From NCBI GenBank assembly GCA_002269645.1, contig NIVC01001446.1:62001-126000 (forward strand): DNA of 64,000 bases. Direction: 5' to 3'. The position numbers and the translations under genes were made by a program. Origin of the DNA: Macrostomum lignano (Eukaryota). Shown one piece after another: positions 7,209 through 63,004 of the stretch. How positions within the stretch are numbered: position 1 is the stretch's first letter; the number at the start of each line of letters is the position of its first letter. The notes below the pieces were generated by a model. That model did no database searches. It saw only the letters and a list, made by a program, of their open reading frames with translations, and had not been told where the DNA came from.

Positions 7209-14177
<6,969 letters not shown>

Positions 14178-14923
14178 GCTTCCTTCCCTGCTGGTCTCCT
14201 GTGTTTCGGACTGCCTGCCGCAGCTGGGTTTCTCAGCTGGGTACTAATGCCCCACTTCATATCCAGCTGGTTTGCCCTTAATCCCCCCCGAATGCCCTAC
14301 TCCTCCTTCTGCACTCATCGACCCCTGGACGCCTTATTGACCCCCCGAATCCCCTGTCCCAGAAGCAGAAATATTCTTATCAAAATGGCTGTTTAGACAT
14401 TTTCTACATTTATTGCTAGTATTTATTGCAGGCTACTACTGACATACTTGTTTCAGTAGTATGATAAGAACTTGAGCAGTAGTTTCATTCTTGTAATGAA
14501 CAGAAATCTGATTAATTTTGTTTTTCGTTTTCGAATTTTTTAGATGGGTATAAATGAAACATACAGAGCTTGCCTTTCTGTAGGAATTAGCTTTTCGTAA
14601 ATTTGAAAATGGGTATCTTTTCAGTGTTTTTCTTTTGTAACTGGCGAAATTTGTTTAAAGAATATAAAAACTTGTACCATTCTTCAGGAAGGGGGGCCGT
14701 TACCGGCAAGAAAGACTATAAATCTTTTGTGGCTATAAATAGTCAAGTTTATGGCCCTAAAAGGAGGCATCCCTAGTGGCTCAAGGGACTACTAAGCTAA
14801 ACTAAAAATAGGGCTTTAAAAATGCACGATATGCCGTTTTGCTGTTTCACTTCTTGTGCAGCTGTGGAGTTTGTCGTGCAATCCACATCAATGAGGACCA
14901 GCTCTCGCCACCAAGGCCTAACG

Positions 14924-15140
14924 AATTAGAATTAGAATTAGAATTAGAATTAGAATTAGAATTAGAATTAGAATTAGAATTAGAATTAGAATTAGACGAT
15001 TAGATACGTGAGCGTGTGCCTGAGTACGCTTAGCTGTGCTCAGGGGTCAGTGGAATGGGCAGAATCACCTCAGGGCTGGTTCTGAGACGATGTCGCCCGA
15101 AGGCTTAGCGCCAGGGTGCCCGACAGCTCCATCAAATTTA
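14924..15140 (+). mobile_element. (GAATTA)n tract followed by a diverged SINE-A-related 3' module
   Basis: Contains TGCTCAGGGGTCAGTGGAATGGGCAG, GACGATGTCGC and GCGCCAGGGTGC, in the same order as in the SINE A tails at 2217-2300 and 26316-26396. Confidence 0.6.
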
Positions 15141-15356
15141 TTACAATTAACAGGCAACTGGGCCTGCTAGATGATCTGCGCAAAAGCAGAGCAGGCAGGC
15201 AAAACTGAACTTCTTTTTAAAACCAGACTTCAGCCATTTTTTAATTTTTAAATACACCTGTGAATTACCATCCAGGAGCGAATGAAGGCCAGGTTGTTGC
15301 TTTCAATTCAAAGCTAGAATATACATCTAGGAATTAAAACTTGTAAGTCAGCTTCA

Positions 15357-15585
15357 AACAAAAACGTGTGAATCAGTCTCGGACAAAAACGTGTGAATCA
15401 GTCTCGGACAAAAACGTGTGAATCAGTCTCGGACAAAAAAATGTCAATCAGTATCGGACTAAAAACGTGTAAATCAGTCTCGGACGAAAACGTGTGAATC
15501 AGTCTCGGACAAAAACGTGTGAATCAGTCTCGGACAAAAACGTGTGAATCAGTCTCGGACAAAAACGTGTGAACCAGTCTCGGAC
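15357..15585. repeat. 25-bp tandem repeat (CAAAAACGTGTGAATCAGTCTCGGA), ~9 copies
   Basis: Direct reading. Confidence 0.95.
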
Positions 15586-16071
15586 GGCCTTCAAAGAATT
15601 TTCGCCATCATCAACTCTCTGTAATTGCAGCGGTAAAGTGCTGCGGAGGTTATTTTAGCATCATCAGTGCATTCCAGCTTTCAATAAATTTGAGACAAAG
15701 TGCTGAGCAAACGCTAATTAAAATGCCTGCTCAATCGCAAAGCTGAGCAAATTAGTTTGGATCTGGGCAGCCGCATCTGCTCTGCCATCAGCTTGCGCCG
15801 TTAAAAAACTGTCGCATTTATTGACAGAAAACCCGGCCAGCTCACTGACAGCAGGACGGGCTGCTCAAATAAAAATTAGCTGATTGAAATGCTCTGCCTC
15901 ATCGTAACCCCAGTTTATGCAGCACCGCGCAATCACGCTGTCTGGCTGGTGCACATCGGGTCACAATTTGCTGCACTGGACTCTGCGCCATCAGATCCGG
16001 CACTTTCCCTGCCACTCGTCTGCTATTTCTGGAGCCGGGAATTCTATATTTGCTGTAAACTGTTCTATTGA

Positions 16072-16896
<825 letters not shown>

Positions 16897-16977
16897 CGCA
16901 CACTGCATGCAATTACGAGTAATAAGATTTGTTTAAGTGCCAGGCACGACAATTTCCTTACGCGCAGGCCTCACGCC

Positions 16978-18829
16978 ATGTCCTCAGCCACTGTCATCTC
17001 AACAGTTGACGAGCTCGCGATCAAAATGGCATCCTCGCGTGAGGTGGAAGCTGACCCAATTAACTTCGTCAACAACCTTCCTCAACCTTTCTCCACTGCC
17101 GCAGGTAACCATGTGGGCAGTGAGTGAGTGAGTGAGTGAGTGAGTGAGTGAGTGAGTGAGTGAGTGAGTGAGTGAGTGAGTGAGTGAGTGACCTGCTGCC
17201 AGGATGCACTCCACCGCCCAATGTCCAATCAGATGAAGAGAAAGACAAGAAAAGCTGTGAGGGGGGGAGGCAGGTGGCAGACGGCTCTATATGAATGTCG
17301 CCGTGGCCTCAGTGGGTGGGCCCTCCGCCACTGCAGTTTGACAAGCTCGGCACACTGAATCATACACTCCAGAGCGCAGCGTAGAGGCGACAGATTAAGT
17401 GAAAAAGGACCCCAGCAATGTGAGTGAATTGCTGCTTGTGCTTGGCAAAAAAGGGATTGAAGAAGGAACTTTGATATTCAGCTGGTTATACCTAGCGACC
17501 TAATTTTTGGGAAAAACAATATTTAAACTGTCTGTAGTAGTTGTAGGGGATTGCAGCCTAGTGGTTGGAGCGTTGGATTCACGGCTGAAAGGTCAGGGGT
17601 TCGATTCCCGACCAATTAGATGCAATAATCAATTATTATTATTGTGTGACGATTTAGAAAGTATGTGCGGCTGTACACCCCGTGTGAGCTGTGTGTGCTT
17701 GCATGTCCTCAGGAGGCAGCGAAAAGTCACTGCAGTCATCTTTCGAAATCCTCTACTCCAGCTTCAGCTACTCAGCACTCGAAGCCCAGAATGCTGGTGA
17801 CACAGCGGTCGCTGCAGCTGCTCGCCTGCTTGCTGGGCGCCCTGCGGCTCTGCCATCCCGCCGCTGCCGCCAGCTTTGCCGCGCGCGACTTCGACCCCGC
17901 ATTGCTGATGGAGGAGGAGGTGAGGAGGAGGAGGTCTGGCTGCACTCGGAAAGCGAATTCTCATGTTGTCTGGCGGTACCAGCCTCCCCCAACCTTCATC
18001 TTGATTGAGCGGCTAGTTAATATTAATAATGCATTGCAGCTGCAGCAGTTGACTGCATTTGATGGCAGCAACCGACAGAAAGTCTGCAAAATTCTCGGCG
18101 ACAAAGGAATTGTCCCGAAAGAAATAAAATTTGATTGGAAAATGAAAAAGTTAAATCAGTTTCTGAAATCCCTGCCCGATCCTCTCTCTCATCCGGATGC
18201 TTTTGTGAGATTGGCAATAGCAATGTCAAAGCTATTTTTGCTAGACTGCAAATACTACTCTATTTCGATGAGTAAACGGTTTGGGGGCAATAAATGTATT
18301 TAATTTTTTCAGCAAATGCAGTTTTCCATTCCCCATCGGACACTACTCAGCCTCCACAGAGAGTAAAAAGCTGCTCTCATTGCCCGAATAGCGTATGACC
18401 AGGTAAACACGCAAGGTGCTCTGGCATCGCTAAGAGAATGACAAACTTTGCTCCCAAAAACTCCCTGATCCTCCATTATCAGCTACTAGGCCAGCCTTCA
18501 TAAATCACTCACTCACCTTTCTGCAGCTGAGGGATTCCTAGGACTTTTTTAATTGCAAAAAAGCAAGCGGAATGCTTCATTTTTAGGGATCCATTAGATT
18601 TGGAGTTTGAGCTGGAACTAATGGAGTCCCCCCTGCCGTCACCCATCATCTTCAGCCAGCCTTCCTGCCAGACGATCTGGACGAATTGATTGAACCGCCT
18701 CCTGACGCGAGCATAGCGGTTGAGAACGCCGAGGATCGCGTGCTGCCAGCGGCCCCAGCAAGGAGGCGCTCCGGCCAGAAGCTGCCGAAGAACTGGTGCG
18801 TGTTCCACCCAGTCTCCTGCCACGGCTGA
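16978..18829 (+). CDS. AstC: Allatostatin-C/somatostatin-like neuropeptide precursor
   Basis: Core exons 17791-17919 (MLVTQRSLQLLACLLGALRLCHPAAAASFAARDFDPALLMEEE, signal-peptide-like) and 18656-18829 (PAFLPDDLDELIEPPPDASIAVENAEDRVLPAAPA-RRR-SGQKLPKNWCVFHPVSCHG*), joined at phase 0. C-x6-C ring CVFHPVSC resembles the AstC motif CYFNPISC. An upstream exon 16978-17104 can splice in frame via acceptor 17761. Confidence 0.75.
17546..17644 (+). mobile_element. Internally deleted copy of CORE-like SINE family B (tRNA head joined to tail)
   Basis: A-box CAGCCTAGTGG and B-box GGTTCGATTCC, followed directly by TAATCAATTATTATTATTG, the same tail as the element at 38484-38817. Confidence 0.75.
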
Positions 18830-19133
18830 GCACCCGGCAAGCCAACTCAGCAGCTGAATGGACCAACTTTGACAGGACAGCCAATAAGATCCAACGGAAT
18901 TGACTTGCTTAATGCGTTCACTTGTGCCAGTTTCACCGAAGCTGTTACCCAGGACGTGAAATCAATTGATCGTTGCAAAAATATTACAGCAGAAATACCT
19001 GCTGGAGACCGTCATCTATAAAAGACTTTCCTATTCAGTTTTTTATGGCTTCCTGTCTGCGTTGGACTTGGCTTTTTTCACTCATTCGGGCGTTCTTGAT
19101 CGCTTCTTCTTCTAGTTTGACAGTTCTGGACCG

Positions 19134-19625
19134 GACAATGTGTCTGTGTGAGGGACAATGTGTCTGTGTGAGGGGCAATGTGTCTGTGTGAGGGGCAATG
19201 TGTCTGTGTGAGGGACAGTGTGTCTGTGTGAGGGACAGTGTGTCTGTGTGAGGGACAATGTGTCTGTGTGAGGGGCAATGTGTCTGTGTGAGGGACAATG
19301 TGTCTGTGTGAGGGACAATGTGTCTGTGTGAGGGACAATGTGTCTGTGTGAGGGACAATGTGTCTGTGTGAGGGACAATGTGTCTGTGTGAGGGACAATG
19401 TGTCTGTGTGAGGGACAATGTGTCTGTGTGAGGGACAATGTGTCTGTGTGAGGGACAATGTGTCTGTGTGAGGGACAATGTGTCTGTGTGAGGGACAATG
19501 TGTCTGTGTGAGGGACAATGTGTCTGTGTGAGGGACAATGTGTCTGTGTGAGGGACAATGTGTCTGTGTGAGGGACAATGTGTCTGTGTGAGGGACAATG
19601 TGTCTGTGTGAGGGACAATGTGTCT
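19134..19625. repeat. 20-bp minisatellite (TGTCTGTGTGAGGGACAATG), ~24 copies
   Basis: Direct reading; runs into a SINE-A-like TG-rich segment and hairpin at 19620-19686. Confidence 0.97.
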
Positions 19626-20019
19626 GTGTGTGAGCGTGTCTGTGAGCGCAGTGTCTTTGGCGCGCTCAGGGGTCAGCGGAATGGCCTTCCTACATATCGG
19701 TTTATTTGAGTATATAGGATGGTAGATCCAGTCAGTTCTGTTTTTAGAGACCTTCTGTAAAGCAACCGGAGTGGCGTGAGGCAATAAGGGATAAAACTAA
19801 AGCTGGTCCGCGCTGTTTTGTCCGATAATGTACTTGCGCTTGACTGCACAGCCGCATGTTCGCGAGTAATCAACGCCCTTTGATGAAATTATGCGCTCAA
19901 CTTCCTAAACAGAGATTGCACGGAATTGAAACTGTCTGGAATTAGAATAATCTTATAAAAGGAGTGGATTATATATAATGCTCAGAGATCAATGGCTTGG
20001 GAACAGGATCAGAGGAGTA

Positions 20020-20385
20020 AGTCTGGGATCAGGGGAATTAGGCCTGGGATCAGGGGAATTAGGCCTGGGATCAGGGGGATTAGGCCTGGGATCAGGGGAA
20101 TAAGTCTGTGATCAGGGGAATTAGGTCTGGGATCAGGGGGATTAGGCCTGGGATCAGGGGAATAAGTCTGTGATCAGGGGAATTAGGTCTGGGATCAGGG
20201 GAATTAAGTCTGTGATCAAGGGAATTAAGTCTGGGATCAGGGGAATTAAGTCTGGGATCAGGGGAATTAAGTCTGGGATCAGGGGAATTAAGTCTGGGAT
20301 CAGGGGAATTAAGTCTGGGATCAGGGGAATTAAGTCTGGGATCAGGGGAATTAAGTCTGGGATCAGGGGAATTAAGTCTGGGATT
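20020..20385. repeat. 21-bp minisatellite (CTGGGATCAGGGGAATTAAGT), ~17 copies
   Basis: Direct reading. Confidence 0.95.
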
Positions 20386-20574
20386 AGGGAAATCGAAACT
20401 GAACAACTGAATTTGAGTTGGTAAAGCAAAATCAAGATGTACAGTTTAACACAATCAGGTATAAAAAATTCTGTCTTTTTATTTTTGTCGATTTTACAGG
20501 TGCAAGTCACGTGACAAGGAGACGGTACTTATCGTGATTTATCTAATAAGTCTCATGTCTCAGCAATGACATCC

Positions 20575-23500
20575 TCAATAGGTGGGCAACTCCTGCAGCG
20601 AGGCGGCAGTCATGACGGGAGTCTCCGCAGCCACAAGCGCCGCAGGAACTGCAATTGGAGCGAAGTGATATCGGTGGAAATGCTGCACGAGTCTTATCAC
20701 AAGGACTTATCTTAGACAAGGTCATATCCTTGTCTTATCATTGGGTCCAATAATCCAGGTACTATTTAATTATCCAGGTATTGATCACTAATTAGAGATC
20801 CAATCATCCAGGTACTATCCAATTATCCAGGTATTAATCACTAATTAGATATTCAATGTGGTTTTGCTGTTTCTGAGTACCCTGTTCACACTACCACAAA
20901 AGTACCGTCTCAAACCAACCTGACGAGCGCAGGCTCCGGCTGACGTTCTGCATCAGAGAGTACCGCTCCAGGTGTCGAGTGATTGAGATTCCCGACCGGT
21001 GCAGGCCGCTTCTGGCCAGCCGGTCCATCAAGCAGTGCTCCTGTCGGATGCAAGCCCCGACCACCCGCTGCGGGCCCGCAGTCTCGGGCTGAGCCGCCAA
21101 GCAGGACTGCTGCCTGCCGCCGGCCAGTCGAACCCATTCGCTGCTGGTCACGTGACTTGGACGCCCGAGCTGTCGTCGAATCCAGGGCTCCGACTGCGAT
21201 CGGACGAGATCGCCGGATGGCGTAGGTTGTCGCTGCTGCTGCTGCAGTTGTTCTTCTTGTCGGCGAAAGTAGAAATCACCTCCAACGGTCGGCCAATATG
21301 GTTCGGCAGCGTCCGAGTTGTACTTGCGGTCGATAGCGAGCAGCAAGGCGGCTCGGCCAAGCCGAGGATCCGCGGCGTTGGTCGGGTAATCCGTCGAATG
21401 ATTCACGAACAGCACGTTGTCGTTGCCAGCGATGAACTCTCTGGGTTCGGAGAGTCGGATTGAGCTAGTTTGTCAGAAGATGCAGCTCGTGAACAAACGT
21501 CATTCTGGTCTGAAGTCGTTCTGTTCTGACGTCATTCTGTTCTGACGTCATTCTGTTCTGACGTCATTCTGTTCTGACGTCATTCTGTTCTGACGTCATT
21601 CTGTTCTGACGTCATTCTGTTCTGACGTCATTCTGTTCTGACGTCATTCTGTTCTGACGTCATTCTGTTCTGACGTCATTCTGTTCTGACGTCATTCTGT
21701 TCTGACGTCATTCTGTTCTGACGTCATTCTGTTCTGACGTCATTCTGTTCTGACGTCATTCTGTTCTGACGTCATTCTGTTCTGACGTCATTCTGTTCTG
21801 ACGTCATTCTGTTCTGACGTCATTCTGTTCTGACGTCATTCTGTTCTGACGTCATTCTGTTCTGACGTCATTCTGTTCTGACGTCATTCTGTTCTGACGT
21901 CATTCTGTTCTGACGTCATTCTGTTCTGACGTCATTCTGTTCTAACGTCATTCTATTCTTACCTCATCGTTTTTGACACCATGTTCTGACGTCGTCCTGT
22001 TTTGTGGCGTCATTTTCTTCTATTGTCTGACGTCTTTGTGACCTCATTCTATTCTAACATTTTTTATCCTAGTGGGTAAGCCTGAAGAGCAACATTTACG
22101 GGTAGAGATACATGTAGACATTGAGTATATGTTTACTTTTTGGGAACTTACTCTTGAAGAGCCAATGCATCACACGCATCTGCACTCACCCAGCTAATGA
22201 TATGGTGGTTTCTTCCGGCATTGCTGGATGTTTTTAAAGCAACGTCTTATCTTCTGCTTCTGCTAGCGTCTAAGTTGACAAGAAAATGATGGGATACAGG
22301 CCTAGAAGATGAGTTTATCTTCGCTCCTAGTAGAAATAAAAAAATGATTGCTGAGTTCTCTGAGTGGGCTGAAGAGCATCTTGAAAATGCTTGTTTGCTG
22401 AACCTAACCCTATCATCTTGCTGGCACTGTTGGATGTTGTTTTCCTACTGTCCACAATGAGGGAAGTCCACATTGAAAAGCTTTATAACAATGTCAGATG
22501 CTAATGTCACTGCGGCAGTCCCAGTATCAGATGCTAATGTCACTGCGGCAGTGTGTCACTGTGTCATATGCTAATGTCACTGCGGCAGTCCCAGTGTCAG
22601 ATGCTAATGTCACTGCGGCAGTCCCAGTGTCAGATGCTAATGTCACTGCGGCAGTCCCAGTCAGATGCTAATGTCACTGCGGCAGTCCCAGTGTCAGATG
22701 CTAATGTCACTGCGGCAGTCCCAGTGTCAGATGCTAATGTCACTGCGGCAGTCCCAGTGTCAGATGCTAATGTCACTGCGGCAGTCCCAGTGTCAGATGC
22801 TAATGTCACTGCGGCAGTCCCAGTCAGATGCTAATGTCACTGCGGCAGTCCCAGTGTCAGATGCTAATGTCACTGCGGCAGTCCCAGTGTCAGCAACTCA
22901 CTTTGCTCCACCCTGCTGGATCGGTGGCAGTCGGTCCGCAGTTCGATTCTCCCCACCCAAGGTAGCTCGCCGGGCCCGGGCCTCAAGCGCGACCTGGTCC
23001 ACCCTGGCTATTCGGGGAAGGCTTCGGAGCATCTTGCGAATGCGGTGCTCGTCCAGGAGGCTGCGGGATGGCGGAGGGAGAGACAGAGCTCGGTCTAGCC
23101 TAATAAACTGTTCGATGTTTTGAGTAGTGAATTGTCAACTTGATGAGGCTGAATCTGACACTGGATGAGACTAGGCTGAGACTGAGCTAGACTAGGGTGA
23201 GACTGGATGATACTGGGGTGAGACTTGATGAGACTGGGGTGAGACTGTGTGAGACTGGGCAAGGCTAAGATGAAACTGGATGTAACTAGGATGAGATTAG
23301 GTAAGACTGAGTGAGACAGGTGAGATGGTCGAGACTGAATGAGACTGCGGTGAGACTAGGGTGAGACTGAATGAGACTGGGGTGTGACTAGGGTGAGACT
23401 AGGGTGAGACTGGACGAGACTGCGGTGAGACGGGTGAGACTGGGGTGAGACTAGGGTGAGACTGTATGTGACTGGGGTGAGACTGAGACAAGACTAGTGG

Positions 23501-25985
23501 GAGTCTATGGAGAGGACCTGGCGAGACCTGGGTGTGTGGATACACTAAGCAAAGCTTCTTACTCGTAAACATCGGCGCCTCCAGCAGCTGCGCGCTGGTT
23601 GTCGCGCTGCAGCTCCGCCACCCGCGGCGAATTCTTCTGAGAAGAGAAACAAAATTTTTTTACCACAGCTGATTCAGCCTACTAACAGTAAAAATATGCG
23701 AGTAGAACAGCCACTCCCTCTCTCACCGACTCGTTCGCGTAGACAGCGCTGGCTGGAGTGACTCGCCCTCCGGCTCCCATGGTGGCTCCGCTGAACTGCG
23801 CGAAGGCTGCAGGAGCGGCAGCGGCGGCGGCGGCGGTGGCAGCGGCAGGAGAGTCAGATGCGGCAGCGGTGTCGAAGGCAACCGCGGATTCTTCAGCAGA
23901 GTCCCCTTCGATGCTAAGGGCGGCCGCGGCAGCCTCGATGTCCCGGAGGCTCCGCCGTTCTTCGCTCAGAGCGTCCAGCAGCTGGGCCTGCTGGTGCTGG
24001 CGATGTCCTGCAGCCGTCATCGCCACCGCCGCCACCGTGACCTCCCTGGTCGGAGCCTGCAGACTGGCGTACCCTGACTCCGTGGACGCCGCCATGGCAG
24101 TCGACACCGTGATGCCGACATCGACTTCCTCGGAGGTGCCCAAATCCTCGAGAAGTCGGCGCAGGTGGTCAGCCTTGGCAAGGCTCAGCCGGCGCCTGGC
24201 CTCATCAGCGCCATCGGCCAGGAGTTCCAGCTCTGTGACGGCGGCCAGCTGAGTGAAGACCTCCGTTAGCACCGAGTGCTGCAGGTGCTGACCGAAATCC
24301 AGCTGACTGCGGGTTTCAATGGGGTCTAGGATCTGGGATCTAGGATCTGGGATCTAGGATCTGGGATCTAGGATCTGGGATCTAGGATCTGGGATCTAGG
24401 ATCTGGGATCTAGGATCTGGGATCTAGGATCTGGGATCTAGGATCTGGGATCTAGGATCTGGGATCTAGGATCTGGGATCTAGGATCTGGGATCTAGGAT
24501 CTGGGATCTAGGATCTGGGATCTAGGATCTGGGATCTAGGATCTGGGATCTAGGATCTGGGATCTAGGATCTGGGATCTAGGATCTGGGATCTAGGATCT
24601 GGGATCTAGGATCTGGGATCTAGGATCTGGGATCTAGGATCTGGGATCTAGGATCTGGGATCTAGGATCTGGGATCTAGGATCTGGGATCTAGGATCTGG
24701 GATCTAGGATCTGGGATCTAGGATCTGGGATCTAGGATCTGGGATCTAGGATCTGGGATCTAGGATCTGGGATCTAGGATCTGGGATCTAGGATCTGGGA
24801 TCTAGGATCTGGGATCTAGGATCTGGGATCTAGGATCTGGGATCTAGGATCTGGGATCTAGGATCTGGGATCTAGGATCTGGGATCTAGGATCTGGGATC
24901 TAGGATCTGGGATCTAGGATCTGGGATCTAGGATCTGGGATCTAGGATCTGGGATCTAGGATCTGGGATCTAGGATCTGGGATCTAGGATCTGGGATCTA
25001 GGATCTGGGATCTAGGATCTGGGATCTAGGATCTGGGATGCAATTCGAAGACTCACTGCTTGACATCCCGAACCCTGTCGCACATGGCCTCATGATCCTC
25101 CTGCTTGTCGGTGTCCCGCATCAGTCTCAGAAGGCCTCTCGTCACCAGCTCCTTGACTGGCGGCGTCGCCTCCAGAGTGAACCAGCGCTCCGACAGAATC
25201 TCCCGCAGCAGACTCCAGGAATTCCCAGCTTCACTGCTTCCCAAGCAGCTGCCAACTTGATTCATCTCTCCAGGGGCCGGAGGTGAAATCGCTTCAAAAG
25301 CGACATCGGCAGCCGCAGCCATCGATGTCGGAACTCGGTCCTCGGTCAAAACTGCAAAGTCGTCCTGGTCGGAATCGCTGAGCGGCAGCCCCGCTGCAGT
25401 CGTCGAAGACCGCGGATGCCGGCCGCCGCTGCGAAGGCCCCGACGGCTGGCGCGCTTCGACTGGCCGCCGCCGCCGGCCCGCTGTCGGACGCCGCCGCGT
25501 TTCTTCCGGCTTTCCTTCTTCGACGCTTTTGTCTTCGATGTCTTCGAAGCGTCGGGTTCGCCTTGAAAGCTGACGGATTTCCTTGAAGCCTTTGACTTCG
25601 ACAGCGCTGCTGCCGCCTCTCCCCCGGCCACGGCAGTCGCAGCTTCCCCATCGAAGTTCACTCCGGCATCGTCGTTGATGTCGCCATTGTCGGCGTCCCA
25701 GGAGGAGCCCGCTACTGCCGCTCCAGCCGCTGCCTGACGTCTTCGACGGCCTGCCAGGAGCCGCTGCGGCTGCTGCCGCTGCGTCGAAGTCGGCGTCTCA
25801 AAGCTGCTCACGCCCATCTGCACAGCCTCCGCAATGGCGGCTTCATCAAACAGGCCGTAGCGTCTGGACTGCGAATCGGGTGTCAGTGCCAAGTGTTGGT
25901 AGGAAAGCAAGGACTGCATCTGAACGACGCTACACATTACCAGCCTTGGCCCTAAGCATCGGATTTTGATTCCGTGAGGGGCCAT
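20575..25985 (-). CDS. Uncharacterised multi-exon protein with low-complexity and helical segments; N-terminus uncertain
   Basis: Exons ~25985-25057, 24306-23727, 23636-23563, 23099-22902, 21464-20906, 20682-20575 join in one frame (phases 2, 0, 2, 2, 0) with GT-AG boundaries, ending ...GWFETHFHRYHFAP...ELPTY*. No domain recognised by eye. Confidence 0.7.
21521..21960. repeat. 16-bp minisatellite (CTGTTCTGACGTCATT), ~26 copies, each with a TGACGTCA palindrome
   Basis: Direct reading. Confidence 0.97.
22495..22892. repeat. 30-bp minisatellite (GTCAGATGCTAATGTCACTGCGGCAGTCCCA-type) beginning ~9 nt from a donor site
   Basis: Direct reading; ~12 copies adjacent to the donor at 22901. Confidence 0.95.
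23150..23520. repeat. Degenerate ~10-bp repeat (GGGTGAGACT / GATGAGACTA)
   Basis: Direct reading; intronic. Confidence 0.8.
24326..25039. repeat. Near-perfect 14-bp repeat (CTAGGATCTGGGAT), ~51 copies
   Basis: Direct reading; a dimer of two 7-mers, GGGATCT and AGGATCT. Confidence 0.98.
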
Positions 25986-29070: not shown

Positions 29071-33134
<4,064 letters not shown>

Positions 33135-37447: not shown

Positions 37448-40025
37448 TCAGATTTTCTGCTGGTCAGCCTTTTTAGACTGATGATTTTTATCGAAAGCAT
37501 TCGGCTTGGCTGTTTGGTGATGCTTTTCGGGAGTCTGCTGCTTTGCTGCTTGATGGTGCTGCTTTTGGGGAGTTTTTTGCTTTGCTGCTTGATGGTGCTG
37601 CTTTTCTGGAGTCTGCTGCTTTGCTGCTTGATGGTGCTGCTTTTCTGGAGTCTGCTGCTTTGCTGCTTGATGGTGCTGCTTTTCTGGAGTCTGCTGCTTT
37701 GCTGCTTGATGGTGCTGCTTTTCTGGAGTCTGCTGCTTTGCTGCTGGCTCGTGCTCTTTCTTGCCTTGACGATGCCTCGGCGAAGGCTGATCCCTGTGCT
37801 TCGCGGCGTCTCTGTCTGACTTTTGCTGACTCTGATGTCCGTGCTGCTTTTGATGCTTCTGCCCTGGATTGGCCTGCTTCTTCTTGTGCTTATGGGACGG
37901 GCTTGACGAGTCAGTGGACCCAACTTTCACGCCTTTGGTCGGGCTTGACGGGATGCTGTCGCTGGTTTTGTTGGACTTGATCTCTGCGTCCTTAGCGGCT
38001 CTGTGCGCCTTGCCGTCCGCTGGGTGCCGCGCTACCGCGGCCTTGAATGCCATCACCCGGGAGCTCATCTTGCCTCTCGCGGCGTTAGCGGGCTGAAAAT
38101 GGCAGTACAAAGGCCGTCGTGAGACAGCGCGTTTTTTAGTTTCTGGATCGATATGTAGATGCTTAAAGTTCAAGTACGACTTACAACGCTTCATTCACAG
38201 AACTCTACGAGATTATATCAAAAGAAGTCGATGACGCACTGTCACGACTTGTCGCCGGACTGACTTTAAAGAACAAAAAAGCAAAAGCCTTTTCACCTGC
38301 TTGCTGGCTGTCTTTGGCCGAAAGTTCATCAGACCGTCGCGAACCCGGCTAAACACTTCGGACACGGTGCCTGTACCGTCCACCTGAAGGTGCGATGAAA
38401 TTTATGAGGGCCGTTCCAACACCAAAGACCAACCCCCAAAGCACGGAGAGTGTAAGATTCGCGTTAAATTCTTTCACATTACTTAATAATAACAATAGTA
38501 ATAATAACAATAATAATAATTGATTACACCTGCCCAATTTGGGCCAGATGTGCAACCGACAGCTCAGCCGCAGCTATTGCGCGGCGCATCTGAAGGCTGC
38601 GTACGGCTGTTCCGTCCAAGGACTGGGGACTGGGGGTCGCCACACACCCTCAATTACCCCAGCTAATGCTGGCACCCATTTTACAGCTGGGTGAACTGAA
38701 GCAATGCAGAGTTAAGTGTCTTGCTTAAGGACACAAATTGTTTCAGTGAGAACGGGAATCGAACCCCCAACCTTCAAGTGGTGAGTCCGACGCTCTAACC
38801 ACTAGGCTACAACCCCCAAGTACCTGTTGGTAGGCACAGAGTCGAGGAGTATTGAATGCAGCAAGCCTGAAGAACTCACCCGAACCAGCTTGCCCTGCCT
38901 CTCGAAGTACTTCACCACCGACAGGGTCTTCTCTCTGAAAGTCTTGATCTTTTTCTGAATAACTTCCTCTTGATCGGTCCGCCTGCCGCGCCGCATCAGC
39001 CGCTGCCACATGACATCTTCGGGCACGTCGAGGAACACGACCACCCGGCAGGGCACCAGCATCATCTCGAAGGCCATGGCCTGCTCCCGGTCCTTCGGGC
39101 AGCCGTTGATGAGGAAGCCGGGGCTGTCTAGCAGGCGGGCTCGCATCGCGTTGCCTAGCAACCGGAGGACATCGGCCACGGGCACCAGGTCGTTATTGAG
39201 CATAGTCCTCCGGAGCCGGTAGGCCGAGCCGGCGCCCAGGGCGATCTCGGTGCGAAGCAGTTCGCCGGTGGACAGGTGCGTCAGGCCGTAGGTGGACACC
39301 AGCCTCTCGCACTGGGTGGCCTTGCCGCTGCCCGGGCCTCCTGGACGCCAGTCAGGGAATTGGTACATGGGAAATTGCTCAGTGGGGAATAGCTTAATGG
39401 GGAATTTCTGAATGGGGAATTGGTCAATGGGGAATCGTTCAACGGGGAATTGCTCAGTGGGGAATTGCTCAGTGGGGAATTGCTTAATGGGGAATTTCTC
39501 AATGGGGAATTTCTGAGTGGGGAATTTCTCAGTGGGGAATTGCTTAATGGGGAATTGCTTAATGGGGAATTTCTCAACGGGGCATTGCTCAACGGGGAAT
39601 TGCTCAACGGGGAATTGCTCAGTGGGGAATTGCTTAATGGGGAATTGCTTAATGGGGAATTGCTTAATGGGGAATTTCTCAACGGGGCATTGCTCAACGG
39701 GGAATTGCTCAACGGGGAATTGCTCAACGGGGAATTGCTCAGTGGGGAATTGCTTAATGGGGAATTGCTTAATGGGGAATTTCTGAGTGGGGTATTTCTC
39801 AGTGGGGAATTGATTGATGGGGAATTGCTCAACGGGGAATTGCTCAGTGGGGAATTGCTCAGTGGGGAATTGCTATTAAACATCAATGATTAATTCTCAC
39901 CCATTATGAAAATCACTCTGGCAGATTTAAGGTCACCGTCTGAAAAAATTGATTTAGTACATTAGTTTCTTTTGCTTCGTCACTTCAAAAAAGTTCAAAC
40001 AAATTAATCACTCACTTTCCGCCAT
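37448..40025 (-). CDS. Divergent adenylate kinase 1-like paralog with degenerate catalytic motifs and a ~214-aa basic C-terminal tail
   Basis: Exons 40025-40016 (ATG GCG GAA A), 39939-39901, 39340-38880, 38383-38297, 38092-37448 (phases 1, 1, 0, 0). LKSARVIFIMGGPGSGKAT, HLSTGELLR, GFLINGCPK, VDGTGTVSEVF; tail with AAKQQTPEKQHHQ repeats. Confidence 0.85.
38484..38817 (-). mobile_element. Full-length tRNA-derived CORE-like SINE (family B) in an intron of the AK paralog
   Basis: Reverse complement: A-box TAGCCTAGTGG, B-box GGTTCGATTCC, then GTGTCCTTAAGCAAGACACTTAAC...CAGTT..CAGCTGTAAAATGGG, which resembles the MIR/CORE consensus GTGACCTTGGGCAAGTCACTTAAC...CAGTTTCCTCATCTGTAAAATGGG; ends in (ATT)n. 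Confidence 0.8.
39370..39872. repeat. 15-bp minisatellite (GGGGAATTGCTCAGT-type)
   Basis: Direct reading; intronic. Confidence 0.95.
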
Positions 40026-41283: not shown

Positions 41284-43765
<2,482 letters not shown>

Positions 43766-45229: not shown

Positions 45230-45485
45230 TTTAGGTTAGGGTTTAGGCTAGGGTTTAGGTAGGGTTCGGGTTAGGGTTTAGGTTAGGGTTTAGGCTAGGG
45301 TTTAGGTAGGGTTCGGGTTAGGGTTTAGGTTAGGGGTTTTGGTAGAGATTAGATGAGAGTTTAGATTGGGGTTCAGGAATTAACGATAGGATTTAGAGTT
45401 GGCTTCAGGCATTGGAGTTTAGGATAGGGTTTACGTTAGGTTAGGATTAGGGTTTAGGTTAGCGTTTAGGTTAGGTTATTAGGTC
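45230..45485. repeat. Degenerate telomere-like (TTAGGG/TTTAGG) tract
   Basis: Direct reading; flanked by a short inverted pair CAATTGACTG (~45213) / CAGTCAATT (~45495). Confidence 0.75.
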
Positions 45486-60522: not shown

Positions 60523-60954
60523 AGCCGAACTTCATCAGCAGCACTAATTCAAGGATTAATGATGCTGAGTGAGACAAGAAAGGAAGATATGCTCGTTTTT
60601 GTAGCGATTAGAAAGGGAAATGGCGGTCGAGACTCTTCTTGGGTCGATGCATCAGCAAGTTGGGAGGGGAGATGACAGAGCCAATCAGTCAGTCAGTGCT
60701 GCTGCACAAATTTTCTGTTGCCAAGGAATTTCTAGCGGCTGACTTGGCCTAACGAGCTGTCCGCTTCAGCACAGAATGCGGTCTGACTTGATCTGGGCTT
60801 GGGCTGGCACTCCTGGGTGGGGGAGAGCTGAAGTGTAACTGAAATGGGGCCTGAAGAGGGGCTGAATGTTAGCTGAAGGGACACTGAAAGGGGAACTAAA
60901 GGGAGACCTGACGTTGGACACGAAGACGACCTGAAGCTAGGGGACCTGAAAAGG

Positions 60955-62200
60955 ATCTGAAGGGAGACCTGAAAGGAGACCTGAAGGGAAGACCTGAAGG
61001 GAGACCTGAAGGGAGACCTGAAGGGAGACCTGAAGGGAGACCTGAAGGGAGACCTGAAGGGATACCTGAAGGGAGACCTGAAGGGAGACCTGAAGGGAGA
61101 CCTGAAGGGAGACCTGAAGGGAGACCTGAAGGGAGACCTGAAGGGAGACCTGAAAGGAGACCTGAAAGGAGACCTGAAGGGAGACCTGAAGGGAGACCTG
61201 AAGGGAGACCTGAAGGGAGACCTGAAAGGAGACCTGAAGGGAGACCTGAAGGGAGACCTGAAGGGAGACCTGAATGGAGACCTGAAGGGATACCTGAAGA
61301 GAACCTGAAGAGTACCTGAAGGGAGACCTGAATGGAGACCTGAAGGGAGACCTGAATGGAGACCTGAAGGGAGACCTGAAGGGAGACCTGAAGGGAGACC
61401 TGAAGGGAGACCTGAAGGGAGACCTGAAGGGAGACCTGAAGGGAGACCTGAATGGAGACCTGAAGGGATACCTGAAGAGAACCTGAAGAGTACCTGAAGG
61501 GAGACCTGAATGGAGACCTGAAGGGAGACCTGAAGGGAGACCTGAAGGGAGACCTGAAGGGAGACCTGAAGGGAGACCTGAAAGGAGACCTGAAGGGATA
61601 CCTGAAGAGAACCTGAAGAGTACCTGAAGGGAGACCTGAATGGAGACCTGAAGGGAGACCTGAAGAGAACCTGAAGAGTACCTGAAGGGAGACCTGAATG
61701 GAGACCCGAAGGGATACCTGAAGAGAACCTGAAGAGTACCTGAAGGGAGACCTGAATGGAGACCTGAAGGGAGACCTGAAGGGAGACCTGAAGGGAGACC
61801 TGAATGGAGACCTAAAGGGATACCTGAAGGGAGACCTGAAGGGAGACCTGAAGGGAGACCTAAATGGAGACCTGAAGGGAGACCTAAATGGAGACCTGAA
61901 GGGAGACCTGAAGGGAGACCTGAAGGGAGACCTGAATGGAGACCTGAAGGGAGACCTGAAGAGAACCTGATGAAGAGTACCTGAAGGGAGACCTGAATGG
62001 AGACCTGAAGGGAGACCTGAAGGGAGACCTGAAGGGAGACCTGAAGAGAACCTGATGAAGAGTACCTGAAGGGAGACCTGAAGGGAGACCTGAAGGGAGA
62101 CCTGAAGGGAGACCTGAATGGAGACCTGAAGGGAGACCTGAAGAGAATCTGATGAAGAGTACCTGAAGGAAGACCTGAAGGGAGATCCGAAGGGAGACTC
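60955..62200. repeat. 12-bp minisatellite (GAGACCTGAAGG) with variant blocks
   Basis: Direct reading. Confidence 0.97.
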
Positions 62201-63004
62201 TAAGGCCGAAGGGTGACCTTAAGAGGGACCTGAAGGAGGACCTGAGAGAGATCTGAAGGGAAATCTAAGTGGGAACCTGAAGGAAGCCACAGACTCCTGA
62301 AGTATCAGAAACAGGCAACTTCTTAGCAATTAAATCAGCTTCGAACAGAATAAAAATTCTCACCAAAGCAGAATGCAGAGCGAGTTCATTTTTACACCTG
62401 CATGAATTCGAAGAAATCCCGAGAAATCAAAGTATTTTTAGAAACTGTGCTTTATCGCAGGGATAAATAGCGAAGGTTCGCTCTGAAGGATGGGGAATAT
62501 TATATATGAAGCTGGGGATCTGCAAGTTGCCCACTGGTTGGCTGGGGCGCTCCAACCGAAGTCCCTCCATTGAGAGTCCAATCAGCAACTGGAGGCTTTT
62601 TTGAGTTCGAAATAAAATATAAGCCGAATTGATTTGGGATATTGGGATAAAAATGGGAGGTAAAGTAAATTGGGATGTTGGAAAATGCCCACACGGTTGG
62701 GACTTGTCGAGGGCCAGAAATCCCGCGGCTTCAGGCATGGGAAATCAGCGCTGCATTGTACTTGTCCCCCAGCTGCCGCCGTGGGAATTCCGGCTGGAGA
62801 AGCTGCCTTCTTATCTTCCTCAAGCTCCTTTGAGGAGCTTGTCGTGCCTGAGCTGTCAGGGAGTACTGGATGGAGAGTCTGGATGGCCACGGAGCTCTGG
62901 CTGCGATAATTTCTCTAAATTCCCCATTTACACACAGAAGATGTACATTAAGATAGAAGATAGATATATTAGAAGACATAGATTAGATTAGATTAGAATG
63001 AAAT

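What the first reader, a model, noticed from the sequence alone, without database searches (positions are those of the whole stretch)
17762..18829. Hidden allatostatin-C/somatostatin-like neuropeptide precursor with an unusual, probably amidated mature peptide
Seen: two exons absent from the ORF track splice in frame into a 100-aa precursor with a hydrophobic signal-like N-terminus, an acidic pro-region, a tribasic RRR site and the C-terminal peptide SGQKLPKNWCVFHPVSCHG*. Established: AstC/AstCC/AstCCC peptides have a C-x6-C disulfide ring (CYFNPISC, CAFNAVSC), and a terminal Gly is the amidation donor. Inference: this is a flatworm AstC-family gene with a divergent ring (H for N, H-amide for F), and short spliced precursors like this are easily missed by gene callers.
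Basis: partly seen in the sequence, partly recalled or inferred. Interest (0 to 1): 0.78.

Follow-up and report, generated by a model that had tools for sequence, protein, structure and literature searches.

The report
Flatworm allatostatin-C-type neuropeptide gene
This is a real, expressed two-exon gene of the flatworm Macrostomum lignano that most likely encodes an allatostatin-C-type signalling peptide; the gene model is already in public databases, but I found no published description of such a peptide in any flatworm.

Summary
ATG 17791–17919 splices (GT…AG, phase 0) to 18656–18829 and gives the 100-aa product as written. It has a signal-like N-terminus, an acidic pro-region (net charge −12), an RRR site and SGQKLPKNWCVFHPVSCHG-stop.

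The window is Macrostomum lignano contig NIVC01001446.1. The gene is not hidden. The identical model is GenBank PAA67877.1 ("hypothetical protein"), from an annotation built only from RNA-seq transcripts. UniProt auto-names it "Somatostatin domain-containing protein".

Two further genomic copies show 0 substitutions in 303 coding nt against 18/733 variable intron columns (p≈0.002).

The gene meets the published ASTC criteria that could be tested:
- one peptide at the precursor's C-terminus after a basic site;
- a six-residue Cys loop with an FxP motif and an aliphatic first residue;
- a single phase-0 intron in the pro-region, as in spiralian ASTC genes.

Only about 0.02% of random C-x6-C loops resemble a known AstC loop this well. 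It departs in two places: His replaces the usual loop Asn, and a His (probably amidated) replaces the terminal F/Y/W. Amidation itself has a precedent in Platynereis AstC.

No homologue was detectable by sequence search. Receptor, expression site and conservation in other flatworms could not be tested.

Verdict: a new member of a known family, of moderate interest.

The parts
17791..17919 (+). Coding exon 1 (43 codons): initiator Met, signal peptide and the start of the acidic pro-region (…DFDPALLMEEE)
   Evidence: It matches the GenBank gene span of 1,039 nt. There are no substitutions among the three genomic copies; the only difference is an in-frame CTG (Leu) indel near 17810.
17791..17874 (+). 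Predicted signal peptide (about 26-28 aa: n-region MLVTQR, h-region SLQLLACLLGAL, c-region HPAAAAS)
   Evidence: Kyte-Doolittle peak of 2.74 at residues 10-18, net charge +2, and -3/-1 rule sites after residues 26, 27 and 28. This is a heuristic only; SignalP was not available.
17920..18655 (+). Single phase-0 intron (736 nt, GTGAGG…TCTTCAG) interrupting the pro-region
   Evidence: GC is 44% against 66% in the CDS. 18 of 733 columns vary among the copies. The position and phase match the published ASTC/SS gene character.
18656..18829 (+). Coding exon 2 (57 codons plus TGA): the rest of the acidic pro-region, the RRR site, the peptide, Gly and the stop
   Evidence: There are no substitutions among the three copies.
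18761..18769 (+). Tribasic RRR prohormone-convertase site (codons 79-81)
   Evidence: It is the only di- or tribasic site in the precursor.
18770..18823 (+). Predicted mature peptide SGQKLPKNWCVFHPVSCH (18 aa; predicted Cys91-Cys98 disulfide and C-terminal His-amide; monoisotopic mass 2062.998 Da)
   Evidence: The processing steps are inferred from established prohormone chemistry and are not shown.
18797..18820 (+). Cys loop C-VFHPVS-C (six residues between the cysteines, with an FxP motif)
   Evidence: Its best BLOSUM62 loop score is 20, against arthropod YFNPIS. Only 0.018% of 50,000 random loops reach that score.
18824..18829 (+). Gly100 (amide donor) followed directly by the TGA stop
   Evidence: That a C-terminal Gly is the substrate of peptidylglycine alpha-amidating monooxygenase is established knowledge.

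Best explanation
The locus is an expressed two-exon gene of Macrostomum lignano encoding a 100-aa prepropeptide of the allatostatin-C (ASTC) type.

Shown here:
- the reading frame and the splice sites;
- identity with a deposited transcript-derived gene model;
- three genomic copies with exon-specific conservation;
- a precursor layout and Cys loop that fit the published ASTC criteria.

Inferred mechanism:
1. The signal peptide (about 26-28 aa) directs the precursor into the secretory pathway.
2. A prohormone convertase cuts after RRR (residues 79-81).
3. The terminal Gly is converted to an amide.
4. Cys91 and Cys98 form a disulfide.

The product would be the cyclic 18-mer SGQKLPKNW-c[CVFHPVSC]-H-NH2. 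It would be released from neurons or endocrine cells and act on a rhodopsin-gamma GPCR of the somatostatin/ASTC receptor type, most likely as an inhibitory or myomodulatory signal, as in other protostomes.
For: - **Gene model.** 129 + 174 nt with a phase-0 GT…AG intron gives 100 aa. The identical product is GenBank PAA67877.1 / UniProt A0A1I8GQL1, and the deposited gene span of 1,039 nt equals 17791-18829.
- **Transcript support.** That annotation was built only from RNA-seq-derived transcripts plus TransDecoder, with no ab initio prediction (Wudarski 2017, PMC5730564). This implies transcripts spliced across this junction.
- **Conservation.** Three syntenic copies lie downstream of calpain. 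0/303 coding columns vary, against 18/733 in the intron and 11/400 in the adjacent flanks. Fisher p = 0.0019 and 0.00096. The only coding change is an in-frame 3-nt indel.
- **Composition.** CDS GC is 66% (GC3 79%) against 44% in the intron.
- **Precursor layout.** Signal-peptide features are present, the pro-region has net charge -12, and there is a single basic site.
- **Published ASTC criteria met.**
  - Two Cys separated by six residues, and one peptide per gene (PMC8786951).
  - A single peptide in the C-terminal region, and a phase-0 intron in the N-terminal part (PMC7536072).
  - Spiralian ASTC genes have only that phase-0 intron.
- **Loop similarity.** The score of 20 against published AstC loops is reached by 0 of 118 C-x6-C loops in the window's six frames and by 0.018% of random loops.
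- **Amidation precedent.** Platynereis pQPVQCLVNIVSCWamide.
Against: - **No detectable homology.** An exhaustive phmmer scan of 1.84 billion representatives finds only the protein itself, and so do the two word-indexed searches. Current Pfam-A gives no hit even at E<=10. Homology therefore rests on an 8-residue motif plus architecture, and convergence cannot be excluded.
- **Residue departures.** The Asn found in 'most' ASTC loops is His here. The residue after the second Cys is His, not the F/Y/W seen in all 14 published peptides compared.
- **Odd pattern of similarity.** The loop resembles the arthropod type (score 20) far more than mollusc or annelid loops (3-11). That is unexpected for a spiralian unless FxP is ancestral.
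- **Receptor doubtful in flatworms.** An early survey counted 0 SOG-class receptors in S. mansoni and S. mediterranea (PMC3261222). A later neighbour-joining tree does place S. mediterranea sequences in SSTR2-like clusters (PMC10725132).
- **Not tested.** I saw no expression-site, peptidomic or orthologue data.
Confidence: 0.72

Rival explanations
1. A lineage-specific secreted Cys-loop peptide that only converges on an AstC-like ring. It would be a genuine secreted, processed peptide but not homologous to ASTC, acting on another receptor or serving a non-neural role such as a glandular, antimicrobial or reproductive secretion.
For: There is no detectable precursor homology anywhere and no Pfam hit. 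Loop Asn and the terminal aromatic residue are both replaced by His. SOG-class receptors were reported absent from two other flatworms. The motif alone is expected tens of times per genome by chance.
Against: Several independent features coincide: C-terminal position, a single peptide, a six-residue loop, FxP, Ser before the second Cys, exactly one residue after it, and a single phase-0 intron in the pro-region. Only 0.018% of random loops score as high. Lack of precursor homology is normal for short neuropeptide precursors (PMC9048919 introduction).
Confidence: 0.15
2. A somatostatin or SSRP-like (urotensin-II-like) peptide rather than ASTC, as UniProt's automatic name 'Somatostatin domain-containing protein' suggests.
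For: The UniProt name. When aligned from the last Cys, …KNWCVFHPVSC shares K, N, S and C with somatostatin-14 …KNFFWKTFTSC (direct reading; the somatostatin-14 sequence is from my own knowledge). SS and ASTC genes share the phase-0 intron.
Against: Somatostatin has ten residues between its cysteines. Protostome SSRP-like peptides are defined by a C.WK.C motif and have three exons with phase-0 and phase-1 introns. This gene has a six-residue loop, no WK and one intron. The Pfam hit could not be reproduced.
Confidence: 0.04
3. An excitatory-peptide/CCHamide-type peptide, on the grounds that it has two cysteines plus a C-terminal His-amide.
For: EP/CCHa peptides share a disulfide bond and C-terminal amidation, and the arthropod forms end in His-amide (PMC12969411).
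Against: In EP/CCHa the peptide follows the signal peptide directly (Aplysia: cleavage at Ala29/Lys30, with the peptide starting at K30). Lophotrochozoan loops have eight residues, and the tail is GGNamide or GGH/GAHamide. Here the peptide is at the precursor's C-terminus, the loop has six residues, and only one residue follows the second Cys.
Confidence: 0.02
4. A transcribed but non-functional ORF: transcriptional noise, or a fortuitous ORF in a unique island between satellites.
For: The region is surrounded by tandem repeats. The GenBank name is only 'hypothetical protein'. There is no homologue.
Against: Conservation is exon-specific, and the only coding change is an in-frame indel. There is a sharp exon/intron GC contrast. 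The signal peptide, acidic spacer, basic site and Cys-loop-Gly-stop form a coherent layout. The same 100-aa protein appears under both a GenBank and a UniProt accession.
Confidence: 0.05

Closest known systems
Arthropod allatostatin-C (Manduca/Drosophila pQVR[FY]RQCYFNPISCF)
   Same: A single peptide at the C-terminus of a short precursor after a basic site. The loop has six residues and is identical at F, P, S and both Cys, with V in place of I (CVFHPVSC against CYFNPISC). Exactly one residue follows the second Cys. There is a phase-0 intron in the pro-region.
   Different: The first loop residue is aliphatic (V) rather than aromatic (Y). His replaces the loop Asn. The terminal residue is His with a Gly amide donor, not a free Phe. 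Ecdysozoan genes carry an extra phase-2 intron that is absent here. The N-terminal extension is unrelated.
Spiralian AstC (Aplysia SHYSSMCMFNVVACY; Platynereis pQPVQCLVNIVSCWamide; Helobdella AHVPCLFSIISCW)
   Same: It belongs to the same superphylum. The first loop residue is aliphatic. The gene has a single phase-0 intron. The precursor is about 100-116 aa. Platynereis shows C-terminal amidation, and Helobdella lacks the loop Asn.
   Different: The mollusc and annelid loops compared here lack the Pro of FxP, which M. lignano keeps. Loop similarity is low (BLOSUM62 scores 3-11, against 20 for arthropods). The terminal residue is His rather than Y/F/W.
Echinoderm SS1/ASTC-type peptides (Asterias ArSS1 KCIGRFQPFSMPC)
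   Same: A C-terminal single peptide, a disulfide loop, an FxP motif, an aliphatic first loop residue and a phase-0 intron.
   Different: The loop has ten residues, and the gene has an additional phase-1 intron.
Vertebrate somatostatin/cortistatin (Pfam PF03002, the source of UniProt's automatic name)
   Same: A short precursor with one C-terminal disulfide-looped peptide after a basic site, and a single phase-0 intron.
   Different: The loop has ten residues with an FWKT pharmacophore, and there is no amidation. No Pfam match could be reproduced.

Membership tests
Allatostatin-C-type (ASTC) neuropeptide precursor | N-terminal signal peptide | tested here: met
   The n/h/c-region layout is present, with a hydropathy peak of 2.74 and -3/-1 rule sites after residues 26-28. 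This is a heuristic only; SignalP was not available.
Allatostatin-C-type (ASTC) neuropeptide precursor | [quoted passage not shown] | tested here: met
   RRR at residues 79-81 is the only di- or tribasic site. The peptide occupies residues 82-99, followed by Gly and the stop (criteria).
Allatostatin-C-type (ASTC) neuropeptide precursor | Two cysteines separated by exactly six residues (in protostomes 'always', PMC9048919) | tested here: met
   C91-VFHPVS-C98 (criteria).
Allatostatin-C-type (ASTC) neuropeptide precursor | Asn within the loop (present in 'most' ASTC peptides) | tested here: not met
   His occupies that position. The feature is common rather than strict: Helobdella has Ser there, and Koch et al. 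state there is 'no strictly conserved motif'.
Allatostatin-C-type (ASTC) neuropeptide precursor | FxP motif in the loop ('many'), with the first loop residue aliphatic in spiralians | tested here: met
   V-F-H-P.
Allatostatin-C-type (ASTC) neuropeptide precursor | One aromatic residue (F/Y/W) after the second Cys, ending the peptide. This is my observation on 14 published peptides, not a stated criterion. | tested here: inconclusive
   Exactly one residue follows the second Cys, which matches in length, but it is His followed by a Gly amide donor.
Allatostatin-C-type (ASTC) neuropeptide precursor | [quoted passage not shown] | tested here: met
   There is one intron, phase 0, between codons 43 and 44 in the acidic pro-region (criteria).
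Allatostatin-C-type (ASTC) neuropeptide precursor | Statistically detectable sequence homology to known ASTC precursors, or a curated family model | tested here: not met
   Exhaustive phmmer finds only the protein itself, as do the word-indexed searches. Pfam-A gives no hit at E<=10. The loop-only comparison is significant (0.018% of random loops), but it covers just six residues.
Allatostatin-C-type (ASTC) neuropeptide precursor | Activates a somatostatin/ASTC-type rhodopsin-gamma GPCR encoded in the same genome | not testable with these tools
   No M. lignano proteome search by family was possible. The literature on other flatworms is contradictory.
Allatostatin-C-type (ASTC) neuropeptide precursor | Conservation of the peptide in related species | tested here: inconclusive
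   The peptide is identical in all three M. lignano copies. No other species was found, but flatworm transcriptomes could not be searched with a motif.
Somatostatin / protostome SSRP-like | A ten-residue loop with FWKT (somatostatin), or a C.WK.C motif and three exons with phase-0 and phase-1 introns (SSRP-like) | tested here: not met
   The loop has six residues and no WK, and the gene has one intron.
Excitatory peptide / CCHamide | The peptide directly follows the signal peptide, has an eight-residue loop in lophotrochozoans, and ends in GGNamide or GGH/GAHamide | tested here: not met
   Here the peptide is at the precursor's C-terminus, the loop has six residues, and the tail is a single His. 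Only the generic features are shared: a disulfide and an amide.

The most novel reading that the evidence does not exclude
This would be the first ASTC-type ligand recognised in Platyhelminthes. It keeps the FxP loop otherwise typical of ecdysozoans and echinoderm SS1, which molluscs and annelids have lost. That would imply CxFxPxSC is the ancestral bilaterian/protostome ring, preserved in the early-branching Macrostomorpha.

Suppose triclads and neodermatans really do lack SOG-class receptors. Then either Macrostomum retains a signalling system lost in other flatworms, or the peptide, with its two His substitutions and His-amide, has moved to a different receptor.
Probability: 0.25. Interest if true: 0.55.

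Novelty: new member of a known kind. Interest (0 to 1): 0.4.

Why it matters
ASTC/somatostatin-type signalling is regarded as an ancient bilaterian system, but flatworms are a gap in the published surveys.

- The ASTC/SS evolution papers I could read do not mention flatworms.
- An early GPCR census found no SOG-class receptors in Schistosoma or Schmidtea.

A credible ASTC-type precursor in Macrostomum lignano, which is a transgenic and RNAi-tractable model, offers three things:
- a concrete ligand for receptor deorphanisation;
- a data point for reconstructing the ancestral ASTC ring;
- a starting motif for finding relatives in parasitic flatworms, where neuropeptide GPCRs are studied as drug targets.

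It does not overturn anything. It extends a known family to another phylum, and the sequence itself is already public.

Tried and rejected
1. **Homologue searches.** The whole precursor in the word-indexed search of 5.8 billion proteins returned only the protein itself among 17 candidates. The exhaustive phmmer scan of 1.84 billion representatives also returned only the protein itself at E<=0.001. This is uninformative about orthologues that conserve only about 15 residues.
2. **Profile search.** Padded to 57 aa, it returned only the protein itself. The word index cannot be seeded by 13-15-residue peptides.
3. **Pfam-A.** No hit at E<=1 or E<=10, on the precursor or on the C-terminal 20 and 30 aa. 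UniProt's 'Somatostatin domain' label could not be reproduced.
4. **Metagenome scan.** A degenerate DNA pattern for C[VI]F[HNQK]P[VI]SCHG-stop found 0 hits in metagenome contigs.
5. **Literature.** There is no paper mentioning Mlig020559 and no Macrostomum AstC. Koziol et al. 2016 is not held in the library. The polyclad larva atlas reports AstA/buccalin only. Supplements of Koch et al. are not held.
6. **Tandem paralogues.** Arthropod AstC, CC and CCC are tandem genes, so I looked for a second copy. No second CxFxPxxC and no excess of C-x6-C-stop endings occurs in the window.
7. **Alternative splice sites.** The GT at 17934 is out of frame, and the acceptor at 18587 leads into a stop.
8. **Receptor search.** I considered spending the last large protein search on a somatostatin-receptor query. 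I did not, because vertebrate hits would swamp any M. lignano receptor and the result would not be readable.
9. **RNA genes.** The tRNA and Rfam scans of the window found nothing.
Full report
**1. What is in the sequence**

The window carries an ATG at 17791, the first in-frame ATG after an upstream stop. The frame stays open to 17919 and is followed by GTGAGG. At 18655 a pyrimidine-rich tract ends in CAG, and the frame resumes at 18656 and runs to TGA at 18827-18829.

Exon 1 is 129 nt and exon 2 is 174 nt. Together they give 100 codons plus a stop, and the 736-nt intron is in phase 0. The product is:

MLVTQRSLQLLACLLGALRLCHPAAAASFAARDFDPALLMEEE|PAFLPDDLDELIEPPPDASIAVENAEDRVLPAAPARRRSGQKLPKNWCVFHPVSCHG

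No other donor and acceptor pair gives an open frame. The next GT (17934) is out of frame, and the only other in-frame acceptor (18587) leads into a stop. The finding's start coordinate, 17762, lies in the presumed 5' UTR; the CDS starts at 17791.

**2. Where it comes from, and whether it was hidden**

The product is 100% identical over its full length to GenBank PAA67877.1, [quoted passage not shown]. It also matches UniProt A0A1I8GQL1, which carries the automatic name "Somatostatin domain-containing protein". Window 11791-24829 is identical to contig NIVC01001446.1 at 73791-86829. The deposited gene spans 1,039 nt, which equals 17791-18829.

The GenBank annotation of this assembly was built only from transcripts: STAR-mapped RNA-seq assembled with StringTie/TACO, plus a de novo transcriptome, with ORFs called by TransDecoder (Wudarski et al. 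2017, PMC5730564). The existence of this exact model therefore implies spliced transcripts across the 17919/18656 junction. That is an inference from the annotation method. I could not view the reads.

**3. Is it a real gene?**

- **Copies.** Two more copies (g2 and g3, 101 aa) lie on contigs NIVC01001915.1 and NIVC01002352.1. Each sits downstream of the same calpain gene. This fits the known partial genome duplication of the DV1 line.
- **Conservation.** Across the three copies no coding column varies (0/303). In the intron 18/733 columns vary, and in the adjacent 200-nt flanks 11/400 (Fisher one-sided p = 0.0019 and 0.00096). The only coding difference is an in-frame CTG (one Leu) in the hydrophobic core of the signal peptide.
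- **Composition.** The CDS is 66% GC (GC3 79%) and the intron 44%.
- **Setting.** The gene is a unique island between an (AGAT)n array at 16073-16896 and a 20-nt satellite at 19133-19630.
- **Chance.** The composite motif (dibasic site, CxFxPxxC, stop within 3 residues) is expected about 0.005 times per 64 kb. That scales to tens of occurrences per 764-Mb genome, so the motif alone would not be convincing. The independent lines above are what make the case.

**4. Anatomy of the product**

| Residues | Feature |
|---|---|
| 1 to about 28 | Signal-peptide layout: n-region MLVTQR, h-region with hydropathy peak 2.74, c-region HPAAAAS with -3/-1 rule sites after 26-28 |
| 29-78 | Acidic spacer, net charge -12, with no dibasic site |
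| 79-81 | RRR |
| 82-99 | SGQKLPKNWCVFHPVSCH |
| 100 | Gly, followed directly by the stop |

From established prohormone chemistry, the inferred processing is as follows:
1. A convertase cleaves after RRR.
2. The Gly is converted to a C-terminal amide.
3. A Cys91-Cys98 disulfide forms.

The result would be an 18-residue cyclic His-amide of 2062.998 Da.

**5. Comparison with known families**

The published criteria for ASTC are these:
- Two Cys separated by six residues, and one peptide per gene (Jiang et al. 2022, PMC8786951).
[quoted passage not shown] Most peptides have a loop Asn and many have FxP. The first loop residue is aliphatic in molluscs and annelids and aromatic in arthropods and nematodes (Koch et al. 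2022, PMC9048919).
- Spiralian ASTC genes have a single phase-0 intron in the pro-region.
- There is a single peptide in the C-terminal region, and a conserved phase-0 intron in the N-terminal part (Zhang et al. 2020, PMC7536072).

The M. lignano gene meets the loop length, the C-terminal single-peptide layout, FxP, the aliphatic first residue, and the number, phase and position of the intron.

It departs in two places. The loop Asn is His; Helobdella has Ser there, and Koch et al. say no motif is strictly conserved. The residue after the second Cys is His rather than the F/Y/W seen in the 14 published peptides I aligned.

Scored against those 14 loops, VFHPVS reaches BLOSUM62 = 20 against arthropod YFNPIS. 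None of the 118 C-x6-C loops in the window's six frames reaches this, and only 0.018% of 50,000 random loops do. The loop is much closer to the arthropod type than to mollusc or annelid loops (scores 3-11).

C-terminal amidation is not exceptional, because Platynereis AstC is listed as …SCWamide.

**6. Rivals**

- **Somatostatin or SSRP-like.** These need a ten-residue loop, or a C.WK.C motif with a three-exon gene. Neither is met. UniProt's "Somatostatin domain" label could not be reproduced with current Pfam-A, even at E<=10.
- **EP/CCHamide.** It shares only the generic disulfide and amide. Its peptide follows the signal peptide directly, lophotrochozoan loops have eight residues, and the tail is GGN/GGH-amide.
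- **A convergent, lineage-specific secreted peptide.** This is the serious alternative. No search finds any homologue, so the family assignment rests on about eight residues plus architecture.
- **A non-functional ORF.** This is unlikely given the exon-specific conservation.

**7. Novelty**

I found no paper describing a flatworm ASTC-type ligand:
- The ASTC/SS evolution papers do not mention flatworms.
- McVeigh et al. 2018 state that allatostatin ligands were "not yet reported in flatworms".
- A polyclad larval atlas lists only AstA/buccalin.
- No paper mentions Mlig020559.
- From my own memory, the abstract of Koziol et al. 2016 lists no ASTC among conserved flatworm families. That paper is not held here, so this is not verified.

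Evidence on the receptor in flatworms is contradictory. Zamanian et al. 2011 counted 0 SOG-class receptors in S. mansoni and S. mediterranea. A 2023 neighbour-joining tree places S. mediterranea sequences in SSTR2-like clusters.

**8. Verdict**

The ASTC-type reading is the best explanation (confidence about 0.72). The "hidden" claim is wrong, and amidation is not the unusual part.

This is a new member of a known family in a phylum where the family had not, to my knowledge, been described. The sequence is already public and carries an automatic somatostatin-like label. Interest is moderate (0.4). It would rise if a cognate receptor is shown, and if the FxP ring proves ancestral and conserved across flatworms.

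Noticed in passing
window 1-64000 (e.g. 10536-11599, 16073-16896, 24320-25039, 30570-31825, 60873-62261): The window is saturated with micro- and minisatellites (65 TRF rows at score >=200). Most long mechanical ORFs are translations of these arrays. The 19-nt GC-rich satellite at 30570-31825 explains the 68.6% GC peak.
   Followed up: partly
window 43150-43707 (-): A Pfam 'Pentapeptide repeat' hit (E = 6.8e-19) coincides with a 15-nt tandem array at 43096-43576. It is almost certainly an artefact of translating a 5-codon repeat, not a pentapeptide-repeat protein gene.
   Followed up: partly
window 45230-45335: A degenerate TTAGGG-like array (tttaggttagggtttaggctaggg…): an interstitial telomere-type repeat inside the contig.
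   Followed up: no
window 7209-10520 (+), annotated product ending near 14177: The upstream neighbour is a calpain gene. Peptidase_C2 hits fall in two ORF fragments, and the annotated product is 568 aa. It is syntenic with the peptide gene in all three genomic copies. A 30-nt tandem array at 7672-9159 lies within its span.
   Followed up: partly
window 38802-39368 (-): A single uninterrupted 188-aa ORF carries a full-length adenylate kinase domain (PF00406, E = 2.6e-33). It looks like an intronless ADK gene, immediately adjacent to a 15-nt satellite at 39355-39874.
   Followed up: no
window about 17810 (exon 1): The only coding difference among the three gene copies is an in-frame CTG insertion (one extra Leu) in the hydrophobic core of the signal peptide of copies g2 and g3.
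   Followed up: yes
window 17920-17940 (start of the intron): The intron begins GTGAGGAGGAGGAGG, continuing the GAG/AGG purine repeat at the end of exon 1. An unspliced read-through would encode …EEEVRRRRSG…, echoing the ARRRSG processing site of exon 2. This is probably a coincidence of the repeat. The nearby GT at 17934 is out of frame.
   Followed up: partly
window 18883: There is no canonical AATAAA/ATTAAA within 300 nt downstream of the stop. Only an AATAAG lies 54 nt after the TGA, so the poly(A) signal of this gene remains undefined from sequence alone.
   Followed up: no
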